NCBI RefSeq assembly: GCF_003704095.1
Contig: NW_020845389.1
Span: 310,001-374,000 of the forward strand
Source: Pocillopora damicornis
Taxonomy: Eukaryota
Direction of reading: 5' to 3'
Length of the DNA: 64,000 nucleotides
The notes under the pieces are model-generated. The model had not been told where the DNA came from, did not search any database, and saw nothing but the letters and a program-made list of their open reading frames with translations. This document shows, piece by piece, positions 144 to 62,127 of the stretch (positions within the stretch are counted from its first letter, which is position 1; every line of letters starts with the position of its first letter). The position numbers and the translations under genes are program-made.

Positions 144-1687
144 ATGAAAACTCAGCTGGTATGGTGTTTCGCAGTCATCTTCGTTGGCTCCGTGACCGCC
201 AAGTCAATTCATAGTGGTAAGTAAGAATATTTCTCGATAATAAATTGCTCTAGTACACTACACTCATAGTGGAGACGGATTACGACCTACCAAGGTTTTA
301 CGAATCCAGATGCTTAGAGCTGGCGTACATTTATGCAATTCAAAAAATGTATTTTGACTTTCCTAATCCGTTCATCGTTTCTCGTCAAGTAATTAATAAT
401 TAAAGCAATTAAAGTGCCAGGAGACAATCTATCCTTAACCATAGTGGCACTCTTTAGAAATCAAATCAAATCGCGAGGACTCAGCAAAAGGATTATGTGG
501 AATTGTTTTAGCTCAAAGACTTCACTGCCTATCTTTGTAGGCTCACTTGGTATCCAAATGACATATTTGCCAAGTTATGTGAAAGAATTGATTCTTGCGT
601 ACTTTCATCCCGCATTATCCGCTAAAAAAAAATCCGTTTCATCAATACATTTAAATTGATACAAATTCCAGAAAACGTTGTTTTCTCGATATCATGATCG
701 CGTGATAGCTTTAGAGTTTTCCAGTCTAGGAACATCTCATATGTATTATATGAATCTAATCTAAAATTACAAATGCGAACTCTTTTTCATGCCAAAATGA
801 AATTCAAACAATCACGTTTGATCATCTCGACCACTAGCATTAATCTTAGCTCTGAGAATGTCCGTACAAAAAAAACCCAAGATAAAAGGCACAATTTACG
901 TTTCAGGATAAGGTTTGTTTCATTTCATATACATTTTCCACGGTGGAGAAGTATCAAATATGATCAAAAACTAATTGTAAATTATATTTCAGTCGCCAGG
1001 CGATGTGGTTGCACATCTGCTGTTTGTCCACCCCCAGATGCACCTTGTCCTCCTCCACCTGCCCCTCCAGCACCAGTACCACCTGGCCCTCCAGGGCCTC
1101 CCGGACTACCAGGCTCTAACGGATGTCAAGGTCCTCCAGGGATGGCCGGTTGTCCTGGGCTTAAAGGGCCACCAGGCAGTGGAGGGCCACTCGGGCCACC
1201 GGGGCCTATTGGACTTCCCGGTAAACCCGCTCTTCCCGGTCCACCCGGGCCACCTGGCTGCATGGGATTACCTGGCCTCCCTGGATGTGCGGGAATGAAA
1301 GGACCAGCAGGACCAGTTGGGCCGCCAGGCCCGGTAGGACCAGCAGGACCACCTGCCCTCCCAGGCCCTCCTGGACTACCTGGAAAAATAGGCTGTGCTG
1401 GTGCTCCCGGATGCCCCGGTTTCAAAGGCGAGCCCGGAGCGATGGGACCAATAGGACCTCCAGGAGCTCCAGGAAAACCCGCTCTTCCTGGCCCTCCTGG
1501 CCAACCCGGAAGTATGGGACCGCCAGGTCTCCCCGGTTGCAGCGGCATGAAAGGATGCAACGGCAGTCCCGGAGCCCCAGGATTTGTTGGCCCTGCTGGT
1601 CCTCCAGGACCCCCAGGATCTCCGGGTCCACCAGGACCACCTGCTGAGCCACCGTGCGCCCCTTGCGGTGGTGGCTGCTGCGGTTAA
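144..1687 (+). CDS. Gene 1: long minicollagen-like protein (~255 aa), 62-triplet Cys-containing collagen helix with short atypical Cys ends
   Basis: Exons 144-216 ([24 protein letters not shown], signal peptide; donor GTAAGT at 217, phase 1) and 993-1687 (acceptor TTTCAG). The spliced product reads ...HSVARR|[27 protein letters not shown]-(Gly-X-Y)62 with three ALP [27 protein letters not shown]. AATAAA at 1829. Confidence 0.9.
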
Positions 1688-60200: not shown

Positions 60201-62127
60201 TGCAGTGCTAAGGTGACAGGTGTGCAAGTTGTTAAACCGTCAACTTCTGTTACTGCAGTAGCCACACCATCCACTTCTTCATGCCCAGCAAGTTGTGCTC
60301 AAATATGTGCAACTCCGTGTCCTCAGGTGCGTCCAAAACGCTTCTAGTGCTGTAAATTTTTTTCTTTGTAAGACCACCAGTTTGATTCAAGTAATTAGCA
60401 AGGAACTGCATAGCAGCTTTAAGAGGAAGTTACAGATAATCAGATTTCACAAGTCATACGGTTAAAACCGCACGAGGGAAAAATTAACAAAGATACACTT
60501 TTTGTAAACAGAGCTGTTGCTTACCCACAAGCAAACCCGCTAGCACAGCAGCACCAGGCTCCACTAAGCCAGCTTCTTCAGCAGTAACAGGTATGGTAAT
60601 CGTATAACACTCACAGGCAATTGCTGTGAGAGTATAAGTACTGCCATTAGAAATCATAATCCGTCTATGCATCTATGCGTCACACAAACTGTTCCACATA
60701 GAAGGATAGCATACAAAATTCTGAACATCAAATAGGACTACGAAAGATGGGAAATTTATACAGCTAAGAGTTGCAACCGATTTCCAATCATTTTAGCCCC
60801 ACAGGCTGCCATAATCTACGGTTTTGGCAAAATTAGTATCTAGCTGTTACCAAGGGAACGGGTACTTAGATTAGTTTATGTTCTGTTACAGAGAGTAGAG
60901 GACAGACGCCGAACTTAAAATTCAGATAGGCTCGCCAAAATTAGGGTGTAATGAAGGGATTCAAAAGCTAGATAAGATCTTGATGAACTAAGAAGAGAAT
61001 GATTTCAAGTTTCTCGTCCTATTTTCCAGGTAGAGGTTTTTTTTTTATATAACGTACCAAACCAACGTTAGCGAAGGGCTAGTCAGAACGAAGAAAAGTA
61101 CATAGATATCAGAGGAACCGAATAAGTGCTTATTCTGAGAAAACTTTATGTACCGATAAACAGCCACATGTGAGCAACTCAAGATTAGTTTTTTGTTTTA
61201 AATCTGAGGGTTCGAGAGGGTAGCGCGAGTGAATAACTCGACATTGGTTTAGCGTGGTCTGTACTGTTATTAACAACGACATTCGTCATCACAGTGTCAT
61301 GTCATCACAAAAAAATGTTGTGGTGTCACGAGGAGCAGCCGAGTCAGTCCACAATAAATTTTGACCTTTGTGATGACGAATATCGTTGTAGATGAGCACA
61401 GACCATGCCGTACCATTGGCAATTTGTTTGTGTATTTTTTTTTACCACAATAACGTCAAATAAGACGATTCTTTCAGTGCGTGACCATTGCGTGACACGT
61501 TGACACGACAGCGTTGCCTGTACTCTTGCCGAAAACGGCAAATTGGCCAATCAGATTACGACATTACTGCCTATTGTGGTAAAACTTTTTACCAACACCG
61601 GGATAAAAACTGTTTTTAAACGTTGTCACTCTTTAGCCCGGCCAACAGCTACCCCAACGTCAAAGAAACCAAAGCCTGTTTCGTGCGTGGCGCCGGCCTG
61701 CTCTCCTCAGACGTGCCTGCCATCGTGTCCCAAACCATGCTGTACTAAGAAACGCTTTCATGATATGGAACTAGTTGCGGGATGCCCTCGTGTTTGCTTT
61801 TCGAGTTGTGAACAAGTATGTCCCAGGCGCTGCTGTGGTCCTCACCCACCAATTAAAGCTACCATCAACCACAGACCTAAAATCAATGACATCCCCCAGT
61901 CCCCAAGATGCCCGAAGATATGTGCTGATGTATGCGCTCTAGAGTGTCCCCACAGGTGCTGTGGCCCTGGCTCCATGAAGAGGGCGTTTATTTCAAGACC
62001 GTTCCCTCGTTTGGCTTACATGAAAAATCAGTATGCATTTAATCAGAAAAGACACCAAGTACCGGTGTCGCGATTCAATAATCCACGACGATTTGGACTG
62101 AAGAAGAAACGAAACACCATTCACTAA
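57211..62127 (+). CDS. Gene 12: large secreted protein (~683 aa) with a Lys/Asp/Glu low-complexity region, polyproline, 6 full and 2 half CRDs
   Basis: Exons 57211-57298 (MTRLWLASATLLCFAVTVLKCEELNSYES), 58700-59146, 59380-60326, 60512-60590 and 61637-62127. A CRD is rejoined across an intron (CPASCAQICATPCPQ|SCC). The total length is divisible by 3. Confidence 0.82.
61252..61408. repeat. Imperfect ~41-bp inverted repeat, probably part of a non-autonomous transposon in the last intron of gene 12
   Basis: GCGTGGTCTGTACT..ACAACGACATTCGTCATCACA (61252-61293) versus TGTGATGACGAATATCGTTGT..AGCACAGACCATGC (61368-61408). Confidence 0.65.

What the first reader, a model, noticed from the sequence alone, without database searches (positions are those of the whole stretch)
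144..62127. A 62-kb, 12-gene co-oriented cnidocyst structural-protein locus split into a collagen half and a collagen-free CRD half
Seen: 12 consecutive + strand genes with no unrelated protein gene evident between them. Each has a signal-peptide exon ending in a phase-1 intron, usually preceded by a 5'UTR intron. Genes 1-6 have a Gly-X-Y helix (gene 3 a decayed one) but reduced or aberrant Cys ends, and none has two canonical CRDs. Genes 7-12 have 2-8 CRDs and no collagen. Established: canonical minicollagens combine both modules in one chain and polymerise through CRD disulfides into the capsule wall. Inference: here the two modules are divided among neighbouring genes, which suggests a co-regulated parts kit for one capsule type or substructure (for example spirocyst wall or tubule).
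Basis: partly seen in the sequence, partly recalled or inferred. Interest (0 to 1): 0.9.

Follow-up and report, generated by a model that had tools for sequence, protein, structure and literature searches.

The report
Conserved coral stinging-capsule structural gene cluster
This coral region is a real array of at least 13 same-direction genes for stinging-capsule wall proteins, collagen-type genes first and collagen-free cysteine-knot linker genes second, and most of its gene order is shared with Acropora and part of it with a sea anemone, so it is an old conserved cluster and not shown to be a kit for one capsule type.

Summary
The window has 12 signal-peptide exons with phase-1 donors, five Pfam-level Gly-X-Y tracts and 25 CRD-like motifs, all on the + strand. 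Shuffled sequence gives about zero.

Corrections:
- The cluster starts upstream of the window with a thirteenth gene, "gene 0".
- Gene 7 makes two alternative CRD proteins (7a, 7b) from one signal-peptide exon, as RNA contigs show.
- Gene 9 has extra exons, including a ShK domain.
- The N gap lies inside a phase-0 intron that splits one CRD, so no coding sequence is lost.

New here:
- The order 2-4-5-6-7(a/b)-8-9-10-11 is kept in an Acropora-type contig.
- The order 7-8-9-10 is kept in Nematostella.

The "one capsule type" reading is only partly supported. Collagen-free CRD wall proteins are already known (CPP-1, cnidoin, NOWA). Incomplete "minicollagen-like" genes are known in Nematostella. 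Nematostella minicollagen genes with near-consecutive ids split between spirocytes and nematocytes.

Most likely this is an ancient tandem family cluster that supplies several capsule types. I found no description of it in the searchable literature, and a 2011 paper says anemone minicollagens are not clustered. This scan had already noted gene 3 on this window and collagen-less CRD genes on other pieces of the genome.

The parts
144..1687 (+). Gene 1. Signal-peptide exon 144-216 (phase 1) plus main exon 993-1687. Four Gly-X-Y blocks of 16, 13, 13 and 17 triplets are separated by an A-L-P triplet. There are 8 cysteines inside the helix. Ends are aberrant: [10 protein letters not shown]... at the N side and ...[12 protein letters not shown] at the C side.
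4896..6360 (+). Gene 2. Signal-peptide exon 4896-4965 plus main exon 5957-6360. Layout is KR-CCPCC-P9-(GXY)30 with 7 helix cysteines, then [17 protein letters not shown]. An ortholog with the same layout sits in the Acropora-type contig.
8771..9858 (+). Gene 3. Signal-peptide exon 8771-8840 plus main exon 9464-9858. It is a paralog of gene 2 that keeps CCPCC-polyPro and CCPAPACCK but has lost the Gly-X-Y register. No counterpart lies between genes 2 and 4 in the Acropora-type contig.
11460..12486 (+). Gene 4. Signal-peptide exon 11460-11538 plus main exon 12188-12486. It has an aberrant 9-Cys N-terminal block (CSRSCCEKCCTNVCRRDCIFSCC), a proline-rich stretch and (GXY)12 with 3 cysteines, and no C-terminal CRD. 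Conserved in the Acropora-type contig.
14194..15272 (+). Gene 5. Signal-peptide exon 14194-14257 plus main exon 14944-15272. It has one canonical N-terminal CRD ([18 protein letters not shown]), (GXY)13, and a reduced C end [10 protein letters not shown]. Spliced orthologous cDNA contigs from other corals confirm the two-exon coding model.
16833..18101 (+). Gene 6. Signal-peptide exon 16833-16899 plus main exon 17920-18101. After the KR site comes a cysteine-free (GXY)13 collagen ending APPGPAGRR. Conserved, also cysteine-free, in the Acropora-type contig.
20561..25166 (+). Gene 7, one gene making two proteins.
- 5'UTR exon ends at 20583.
- Signal-peptide exon 20822-20901 (ATG at 20826).
- Small phase-1 exons 21651-21671 (alternative donor at 21713 adds 14 aa in frame), 22211-22270 and 22599-22646.
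- Isoform 7a: 23101-23510, with 2 canonical CRDs, a half CRD and P14.
- Isoform 7b: 23101-23115 spliced to 24113-24651, with 3 variant or half CRDs.
- Transcripts reach about 25150-25166.
   Evidence: RNA contig joints and loose ends. The 7a and 7b exons are conserved in tandem in the Acropora-type contig and in Nematostella.
26730..31322 (+). Gene 8. Exons 26730-26850, 29873-30187 (Lys/His-rich, with an HHGHHHHHHHH run), 30428-30672 (variant CRD CQGNCMDPCTTQCSMRQDCC) and 30921-31322 (canonical CRD followed by an acidic tail).
   Evidence: Orthologs in the Acropora-type contig and Nematostella.
33094..39909 (+). Gene 9. Exons are 33094-33202, about 34557-34628, about 34769-34837, a ShK-domain exon at about 36454-36561, 36964-37809 (Lys/Glu-rich), 38224-38741 (3 CRDs plus the first half of a split CRD) and 39289-39909 (the second half plus 3 CRDs). 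The N gap 38994-39115 is inside the phase-0 intron 38742-39288.
42931..47206 (+). Gene 10. Signal-peptide exon 42931-43015 plus main exon 46518-47206, which has four CRD-type units joined by Gln/Pro/Met/Ala-rich linkers.
   Evidence: Orthologs.
50379..55102 (+). Gene 11. Signal-peptide exon 50379-50466 plus main exon 54708-55102. Layout is CRD, polyPro, half CRD, P19, variant CRD, which is CPP-1-like.
   Evidence: Ortholog.
57211..62127 (+). Gene 12. Exons 57211-57298, 58700-59146 (Lys/Asp/Glu-rich), 59380-60326, 60512-60590 (begins SCC and completes a CRD split by a phase-0 intron) and 61637-62127. It has about 8 CRD units, including the only three in the window with the full C-CRD signature.
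38994..39115 (.). Assembly gap (N run), intronic. Not filled and not looked up.

Best explanation
The region is an ancient, conserved tandem cluster of genes for secreted structural proteins of cnidocysts, the stinging and entangling capsules. In this coral it holds at least 13 co-oriented genes.

Composition:
- Seven are minicollagen-derived collagens: gene 0 just upstream of the window, and genes 1-6. Their terminal cysteine-rich domains are reduced, and in genes 0, 1, 2 and 4 cysteines sit inside the triple helix. Gene 3 has lost the helix register and gene 6 has no cysteine at all.
- Six are collagen-free proteins (genes 7-12) that carry 2 to 8 minicollagen-type CRDs. The CRDs are joined by polyproline, Gln/Met-rich or highly charged linkers.

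Likely mechanism (inferred from the Hydra literature, not tested here):
- Each protein enters the secretory pathway through its signal peptide. Several then lose a short propeptide at a KR site.
- The collagen chains trimerise from their C-terminal (GPP)4-5 runs.
- All cysteine-bearing members are built into the capsule or tubule wall by disulfide exchange.
- Most CRDs here carry the monovalent N-CRD signature. Only gene 12 carries three with the multivalent C-CRD signature, so it could act as a network node.

Why the genes are together: I think the arrangement reflects old tandem duplication and divergence kept in place since before corals and sea anemones split. Different members are probably used in different capsule types and stages, not in one dedicated kit.
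For: Shown here:
- Motif and signal-peptide statistics are far beyond chance and strand-exclusive.
- Pfam Collagen hits genes 1, 2, 4, 5 and 6.
- There is no nucleotide similarity between member genes, so the duplications are old. Each gene tested is single-copy in the 234-Mb assembly.
- Gene 7 is transcribed and spliced at GT..AG sites in RNA runs from three or four independent studies. Word depths run to hundreds, and both 7a and 7b forms are present.
- Gene 5 orthologs appear as spliced cDNA contigs in other corals' metatranscriptomes, with the same reduced C end.
- Gene 9 has full-length orthologs in five Acropora species and in Nematostella.
- Gene order is conserved. The Acropora-type contig has 2-4-5-6-7a/7b-8-9-10-11. 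Nematostella locus L023 has 7-8-9-10.

From papers:
- The CRD pattern and disulfide polymerisation are described in PMC4863159.
- CPP-1 and cnidoin are collagen-free CRD wall proteins (PMC6910907).
- Nematostella minicollagen and minicollagen-like genes NV2.11801, 11802, 11814, 11815, 11816, 11818 and 11820 are cnidocyte-specific and split between spirocytes and nematocytes.
Against: - There are no cell-type or capsule-proteome data for this coral. Expression was checked only for gene 7 here and for gene 5 orthologs elsewhere.
- Orthology between coral genes 0-6 and the named Nematostella minicollagens was not established. That the NV2.118xx genes lie next to the Nematostella CRD genes is inferred from id numbering and from an NCol-7-like gene about 94 kb upstream on the coral contig. 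I did not see it directly.
- The sharp collagen versus CRD partition, and its conservation, could reflect shared regulation, which I could not test.
- Gene 3 might be a decaying pseudogene.
- Genes 0, 1 and 3 were not found in the part of the Acropora-type contig that I reached.
Confidence: 0.8

Rival explanations
1. The cluster is a co-regulated parts kit for one capsule type or substructure, for example the spirocyst wall or tubule. The collagen rods and the CRD cross-linkers are supplied by separate neighbouring genes and assemble with each other.
For: - The collagen-to-CRD boundary and gene order are conserved across corals, and partly in an anemone.
- All genes are co-oriented, with no unrelated protein-coding gene between them.
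- In Nematostella the incomplete minicollagen-like genes NCol-like 3 and 4, together with NCol-5 and Ncol0, are spirocyte markers.
- No collagen here has a full CRD pair, so on the Hydra model most of them would need partners to polymerise.
Against: - The Nematostella genes with neighbouring ids also include nematocyte-specific NCol-4, -6 and -7.
- I found no shared upstream motif, though transcription start sites are unknown.
- Co-expression was not tested in this coral.
- Collagen-less CRD genes also occur on other pieces of this genome, so the supply of linkers is not confined to this locus.
Confidence: 0.2
2. The genes encode proline- and cysteine-rich secreted matrix proteins used outside cnidocysts, for example in mesoglea, skeletal organic matrix or an adhesive. 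The CRD-like motifs would be reused in another setting.
For: - The RNA evidence comes from whole-colony libraries, so the cell type is unknown.
- Tursch et al. mention a mesoglea collagen with a minicollagen CRD in Nematostella, as unpublished data.
Against: - The exact six-cysteine spacing occurs 17 times, and it comes with KR propeptide sites and short Gly-X-Y plus polyproline architecture. This matches the cnidocyst family.
- All Nematostella minicollagens and minicollagen-like genes are strictly cnidocyte-lineage.
Confidence: 0.05
3. Part of the collagen half is decaying. Gene 3, and perhaps the cysteine-free gene 6 and the aberrant-ended genes 1 and 4, would be non-functional relics of tandem duplication and not working variants.
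For: - Gene 3 lost its glycine register.
- Gene 3 has no counterpart between genes 2 and 4 in the Acropora-type contig.
Against: - Genes 2, 4, 5 and 6 keep their unusual layouts in the Acropora-type genome. These include helix cysteines, the aberrant N block, the reduced C end and the cysteine-free chain.
- Gene 5's layout is also kept in at least four further coral contigs, two of them spliced cDNA.
- All open frames are intact.
- Gene 3 keeps both termini, 16 cysteines and a phase-1 signal-peptide exon.
Confidence: 0.15

Closest known systems
Hydra minicollagen tandem gene clusters (David et al. 2008, as cited in Zenkert et al. 2011, PMC3145756)
   Same: Both are tandem, co-oriented arrays of cnidocyst structural genes. 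In the Hydra clusters the repeated genes share a common signal peptide. Here gene 7 does the same, joining two alternative CRD-protein exons to one signal-peptide exon.
   Different: - This cluster is in Hexacorallia, where the 2011 paper stated that minicollagen genes are on different scaffolds and not clustered.
- The members are old and diverged, with no DNA similarity to each other.
- Half of the array has no collagen.
- Only gene 7 shares a signal-peptide exon; the others each have their own.
Nematostella minicollagen-like proteins (NvNCol-like 1, 3 and 4) and NvNCol-7 (Bergheim et al., eLife 2025, PMC12549020)
   Same: These are collagens with a minicollagen propeptide and proline-rich flanks but incomplete CRD features, and some are spirocyte-specific. 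NvNCol-7 has Gly-X-Y blocks interrupted by a single alanine, as gene 1 does here. An NCol-7-like gene lies on the same coral contig.
   Different: Orthology to genes 0-6 was not tested, because I could not obtain the Nematostella sequences. I did not find cysteines inside the helix, or the genomic arrangement, discussed in the text I could read.
Hydra CPP-1 (cnidarian proline-rich protein 1) and cnidoin
   Same: Both are collagen-free capsule-wall proteins in which CRDs flank a rigid polyproline domain (CPP-1) or an elastic domain (cnidoin). Genes 7a, 11 and 12 have CRD, polyPro, CRD. Gene 10 has CRDs joined by Gln/Met/Pro-rich linkers.
   Different: - The coral proteins carry extra half CRDs (C-x3-C-x3-CC) in the middle of the proline rod.
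- They also have basic C-terminal tails.
- No sequence orthology to the Hydra proteins was shown.
- Wall localisation is untested.
NOWA (nematocyst outer wall antigen)
   Same: Like NOWA, genes 9 and 12 carry a run of 7-8 minicollagen-type CRDs in a larger multidomain secreted protein.
   Different: NOWA has SCP/CAP and C-type lectin domains, and neither was found here. Gene 9 has a ShK domain and a Lys/Glu-rich region in their place.

Membership tests
Canonical minicollagen | Signal peptide followed by a propeptide ending in Lys-Arg | tested here: met
   Signal-peptide exons are present for all genes. A KR site precedes the mature part in genes 0, 2, 5 and 6. Gene 1 has RR and gene 3 has KS.
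Canonical minicollagen | Short central Gly-X-Y helix (about 12-27 triplets) flanked by polyproline | tested here: met
   Genes 0, 2, 4, 5 and 6 have 12-31 triplets. Gene 1 has four blocks. Gene 3 fails this test.
Canonical minicollagen | Both an N-terminal and a C-terminal CRD with C-x3-C-x3-C-x3-C-x3-CC | tested here: not met
   Only gene 5 has one canonical CRD, at the N-terminal end. The other collagen genes have CC or CCPCC stubs, an aberrant block, or none. They are therefore better called minicollagen-like.
Canonical minicollagen | Expression restricted to developing cnidocytes and incorporation into the capsule | not testable with these tools
   Only whole-colony RNA contigs were available.
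CPP-1-like CRD-polyproline proteins | Terminal CRDs flanking a continuous polyproline stretch, with no collagen | tested here: met
   Gene 7a has P14 and gene 11 has P19, each lying between CRDs; gene 12 exon 3 has a P22 run flanked by half CRDs within its CRD series. None has Gly-X-Y.
CPP-1-like CRD-polyproline proteins | Sequence orthology to Hydra CPP-1 | not tested
   I held no Hydra sequence, and the searches returned only anthozoan relatives.
NOWA | SCP/CAP and C-type lectin domains before the CRD run | tested here: not met
   Pfam finds neither domain in genes 9 or 12. Gene 9 has a ShK domain in their place.
Hydra-type minicollagen tandem cluster | Tandem co-oriented genes | tested here: met
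   There are 13 co-oriented genes at contig C2024:306-372 kb.
Hydra-type minicollagen tandem cluster | Repeated units sharing one signal-peptide exon | tested here: inconclusive
   This is true for 7a and 7b. The other genes each have their own signal-peptide exon.
ShK-domain proteins (Pfam PF01549) | A six-cysteine ShK domain scoring above the Pfam cut-off | tested here: met
   Window 36454-36561 gives E = 1.2e-9 and 39.1 bits against a cut-off of 20.9. The Nematostella ortholog also hits.

The most novel reading that the evidence does not exclude
The cluster would be a regulatory unit more than 500 million years old, with its order kept because collagen-type and linker-type wall genes share one chromatin domain and enhancers. 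On this reading the helix-cysteine collagens (genes 0, 1, 2 and 4) form a distinct, undescribed class. They would cross-link side to side through cysteines in the triple helix instead of end to end through CRDs, together with the N-type CRD linkers next door, to build the thin spirocyst wall or tubule.
Probability: 0.2. Interest if true: 0.75.

Novelty: new variant of a known kind. Interest (0 to 1): 0.55.

Why it matters
Cnidocysts are a textbook case of a new organelle, and how their structural gene set arose and is controlled is still open.

A conserved block of about 66 kb holds a large share of the minicollagen-like and CRD-linker genes in fixed order in corals, and part of that order in a sea anemone. 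That gives three things:
- a concrete locus for testing shared regulation (ATAC, Hi-C, enhancer deletion in Nematostella);
- a natural series from full collagen to de-collagenised protein (genes 2 and 3), from terminal to in-helix cysteines, and to cysteine-free collagen;
- an anthozoan example of one signal-peptide exon serving two alternative wall proteins.

It also corrects the older statement that anthozoan minicollagen genes are not clustered.

Tried and rejected
- **Gene 2 protein search** (search for homologous proteins): swamped by generic collagens, so uninformative.
- **Gene 10 protein search**: one short metagenome hit on contigs of 2-3 kb, so no context.
- **Gene 5 N-terminal region search**: nothing found.
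- **PDB sequence search with CRD exons**: no minicollagen CRD hit. The domain is too short for phmmer, so this is not evidence against the assignment.
- **Acropora RefSeq and GenBank proteins**: not on record for context look-up. I walked an ENA Acropora-type contig ORF by ORF instead.
- **AlphaFold model of the Lys/Glu-rich exon of gene 9**, from a 7-sequence alignment: mean pLDDT 45.5, unusable, so no fold search was run.
- **Shared upstream k-mers**: only AT-rich words at chance level, with transcription start sites unknown.
- **Papers naming NV2.11817-11824**: none.
- **Papers linking minicollagen with synteny, tandem or cluster**: no description of this cluster. The library lacks most subscription journals, including David et al. 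2008.
- **Recent tandem duplication**: rejected, because the genes share no DNA similarity.
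Full report
**Scope and rules.** I searched spliced gene models exon by exon, by reference, and sent no joined protein to any search tool. Inside local scripts I read across two phase-0 junctions, only to display the two split CRDs. I did not fill, look up or lay reads over the N gap. 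No step had to be referred.

Yes.
- A six-frame scan finds 25 CRD-like motifs, 15 of them exactly C-x3-C-x3-C-x3-C-x3-CC. All are on the + strand and none on the - strand.
- In 100 dinucleotide-preserving shuffles the mean was 0.0 canonical and 0.02 loose motifs.
- Clear Gly-X-Y tracts lie at 1085-1642, 6025-6294, 12370-12477, 15099-15215 and 17955-18071.
- Pfam Collagen scores above its cut-off for genes 1, 2, 4, 5 and 6 but not gene 3.
- Phase-compatible acceptors give the main exons.
- No collagen gene has two canonical CRDs. Gene 5 has one, at its N-terminal end, and gene 6 has no cysteine at all after its KR site.
- Genes 7-12 have 2 to 8 CRD units and no Gly-X-Y.
- Other long ORFs on either strand have no Pfam domain above the curated cut-off; the only hit is a sub-threshold USP8_dimer match (21.3 bits, cut-off 24.6) in a - strand ORF at 32607-32936.

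**2. The assembly gap.**

The N run 38994-39115 lies between a phase-0 donor (CAG|GTAAAT, intron from 38742) and a phase-0 acceptor (ttttag|GTC, exon from 39289). The join reads CPAPCPQ|VCAPACADDCC, a canonical CRD. The Acropora and Nematostella orthologous proteins contain the same CRD uninterrupted. The two sides therefore belong to one gene and the gap is intronic.

**3. Corrections and additions to the gene models.**

- **Cluster extent.** The window is contig C2024:310001-374000 of a 234-Mb assembly. One more collagen gene, "gene 0", lies at C2024:306075-307872. It reads KR-CC-polyPro-(GXY)31 with four helix cysteines, ending AQPCCG. So the cluster has at least 13 genes. I saw nothing similar in the next 40 kb downstream, nor between 217 and 306 kb upstream, although 294-298 kb is full of N runs. 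[quoted passage not shown] It resembles the published NvNCol-7.
- **Gene 7.** RNA contigs from four runs of four studies were laid on 19900-25800.
  - They show a 5'UTR intron (20584-20821; one low-depth contig).
  - They show the signal-peptide exon 20822-20901.
  - They show three small phase-1 exons: 21651-21671, 22211-22270 and 22599-22646. The first has an in-frame alternative donor at 21713.
  - The main exon 7a starts at 23101.
  - In two runs, the contig that carries the second CRD-rich ORF (from 24113) is preceded by the end of exon 22599-22646 plus the first 15 nt of exon 7a. An internal donor (AAG|GTGAAG after 23115) therefore joins to 24113.
  - Gene 7 thus yields two different CRD proteins, 7a and 7b, from one signal peptide and propeptide.
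  - Both exons lie in tandem in the Acropora-type contig and in Nematostella, and the Acropora-type contig also keeps a good internal donor.
- **Gene 9.** tblastn with the Acropora ortholog shows additional exons at about 34557-34628, 34769-34837 and 36454-36561. The last is a ShK domain (Pfam E = 1.2e-9).
- **Gene 12.** It needs a 79-nt exon (60512-60590) that starts SCC. This completes a CRD split by a phase-0 intron and restores phase 1 for the last exon.
- **Caveat.** Genes 8 and 10-12 have long first introns and may hide further small exons.

**4. What the proteins look like.**

Collagen half:
- Genes 0 and 2 have CC or CCPCC stubs, polyproline, and 30-31 triplets with cysteines in the X position. 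The recurring motif is G-C-x-G-x-P-G-x-x-G-C-P-G-[WLFM]-K-G.
- Gene 1 repeats this unit in four blocks separated by an A-L-P triplet.
- Gene 3 is a gene 2 paralog. It keeps the termini and several cysteines but not the glycines.
- Gene 4 has an aberrant 9-Cys N-terminal block and no C-terminal cysteines.
- Gene 5 has one canonical N-terminal CRD and ends [10 protein letters not shown].
- Gene 6 is cysteine-free.
- Genes 4-6 share a helix of 12-13 triplets that ends in (GPP)4-5.

CRD half:
- Genes 7a, 11 and 12 have CRD, polyPro, half CRD, polyPro (up to P22), CRD.
- Gene 10 has CRDs joined by Gln/Met/Pro-rich linkers.
- Gene 8 adds a Lys/His-rich exon and an acidic tail.
- Genes 9 and 12 add long Lys/Asp/Glu-rich regions.

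CRD fold signatures: I applied the published rule that Val/Ile at position 4 plus Pro at position 14 favours the multivalent C-CRD fold (PMC4863159). Of the 17 canonical CRDs, 10 have the N-type signature, 4 have Pro14 only and 3 have the full C-type signature. All three of the last group are in gene 12. This is a sequence-rule inference, not a structural result.

**5. Relatives and synteny.**

- The member genes share no DNA similarity. The genes I tested are single-copy. The duplications are therefore old.
- A full HMMER scan with the last exon of gene 9 found seven proteins. They include uncharacterised 762-778-aa proteins of five Acropora species (68% identity) and Nematostella XP_032222234.1 (57%).
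- The Nematostella locus is L023 (OW051986.1:10860839-10884779). It holds four co-oriented genes whose CRDs match coral genes 7, 8, 9 and 10 in that order. For example, CPAPCPQVCAPACMENCC matches CPGTCPQVCAPACMENCC, and CPGSCPDVCAPQCMESCC matches CPGTCPDVCAPGCISTCC.
- I walked an Acropora-type ENA contig ORF by ORF (scans 68, 76, 78, 81, 86). The order there is 2, 4, 5, 6, 7 (7a and 7b), 8, 9, 10, 11, with matching signal peptides.
- That contig also keeps the unusual layouts: helix cysteines in 2 and 4, the reduced C end in 5, and a cysteine-free 6.
- Gene 3 is absent between 2 and 4 there. Genes 0 and 1 were not seen within 9.4 kb upstream of gene 2. These three may be expansions specific to this coral's lineage.
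- Gene 5 orthologs occur in five further coral-derived metagenome or metatranscriptome contigs. Two are spliced cDNA joining the signal peptide directly to the KR main exon, exactly as modelled.

**6. What is known.**

- The CRD pattern and disulfide polymerisation of minicollagens are established.
- Collagen-free CRD wall proteins are established in Hydra: CPP-1, cnidoin and NOWA.
- Nematostella has five or six minicollagens. It also has "minicollagen-like" proteins with incomplete features, and NvNCol-7 with interrupted Gly-X-Y blocks.
- Published gene ids put seven of these within 20 consecutive models:
  - NV2.11801 is NCol-4
  - NV2.11802 is NCol-5
  - NV2.11814 is NCol-7
  - NV2.11815 is NCol-6
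  - NV2.11816 is NCol-like 3
  - NV2.11818 is NCol-like 4
  - NV2.11820 is Ncol0
- NCol-like 3, NCol-like 4 and NCol-5 top the spirocyte cluster in the marker tables, and Ncol0 is a spirocyte marker by in situ and single-cell data; NCol-6, -4 and -7 mark nematocytes.
- None of the papers I could read mentions this adjacency. Zenkert et al. 2011 stated that Nematostella minicollagens are on different scaffolds and, unlike Hydra's, not in tandem clusters sharing a signal peptide.
- That the NV2.118xx genes sit next to L023 is my inference. I could not fetch that stretch.

**7. Interpretation.**

- The safest reading is an ancient hexacorallian cluster of cnidocyst structural genes, kept in order since before corals and anemones diverged.
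It is weakened by the mixed spirocyte and nematocyte usage of the Nematostella genes with neighbouring ids, and by collagen-less CRD genes elsewhere in this genome.
- The mechanistic points are inference from the Hydra literature and from sequence:
  - trimerisation from the (GPP)n runs;
  - terminal CC stubs acting as a small cystine knot;
  - helix cysteines giving side-to-side links;
  - N-type CRDs as monovalent links;
  - gene 12 as a multivalent node.
- The comparison of the ...PCCG ends with the collagen III cystine knot rests on my memory only.

**8. Verdict.**

This is a new variant of a known kind, namely tandem minicollagen clusters and CRD wall proteins. The new elements are the conserved order across Hexacorallia, the two alternative terminal exons of gene 7, and the conserved helix-cysteine and cysteine-free collagens.

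Noticed in passing
window 36153-36227 (- strand): A tRNA-Thr(CGT) gene (Rfam 68.7 bits; also found by ARAGORN) sits inside an intron of gene 9, about 230 nt upstream of the ShK exon and on the opposite strand.
   Followed up: partly
window 18900-19296: Two roughly 180-nt copies (80% identical) lie in tandem between genes 6 and 7. One contains a tRNA-like match (19095-19167, 50 bits) that ARAGORN does not call. This is probably a tRNA-derived SINE.
   Followed up: no
G000:C2024:210060-216774 (+), about 94 kb upstream of the window: A large minicollagen with a canonical N-terminal CRD (CGSDCPSYCFPECLPDCC), about ten Gly-X-Y blocks of 9-15 triplets, and a C-terminal CRD-like motif (CPAICDKLCVGICPTNNCC). 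It resembles the published NvNCol-7. An N run at 212602-212701 lies inside it.
   Followed up: partly
window 11002-11145, 51391-51529; 35809-36005 and 44672-44869: These are short dispersed repeats in introns and intergenic DNA. One (51391-51529) is its own reverse complement at 84% identity and has a 79% copy at 11002-11145, which looks MITE-like. Another pair lies in the introns of genes 9 and 10.
   Followed up: no
window 30100-30187 (gene 8 exon 2): A histidine run (HHGHHHHHHHH) sits within a Lys/His-rich exon of a CRD protein; the Lys/His-rich exon, though not the uninterrupted His run, is kept in the Acropora-type ortholog.
   Followed up: no
window 21672-21713 (gene 7): An alternative in-frame 5' splice site adds 14 residues to the propeptide region. 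One run uses the short form and another uses the long form.
   Followed up: partly
window 37500-37809 (gene 9) and its orthologs: A strongly conserved stretch of about 90 residues (…TPLTSLSKTVTYKNHKYKITPVVDWERISKMLESLGYKAVHIVG…) has no Pfam match. It is shared by the coral, Acropora and Nematostella. The AlphaFold model was too weak to classify it.
   Followed up: partly
window 23342-23392, 54961-55023, 59831-59911: Long CCN runs encode P14, P19 and P22. The reads tool skipped 23342-23392 as a repeat, so these tracts may vary in length between individuals.
   Followed up: no
L023:295-1000 (Nematostella): A minisatellite reads as (C-H/P-V-M-S)n in one frame and gives false CRD-like pattern hits upstream of the gene 7 ortholog. 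I do not count it as a CRD.
   Followed up: no
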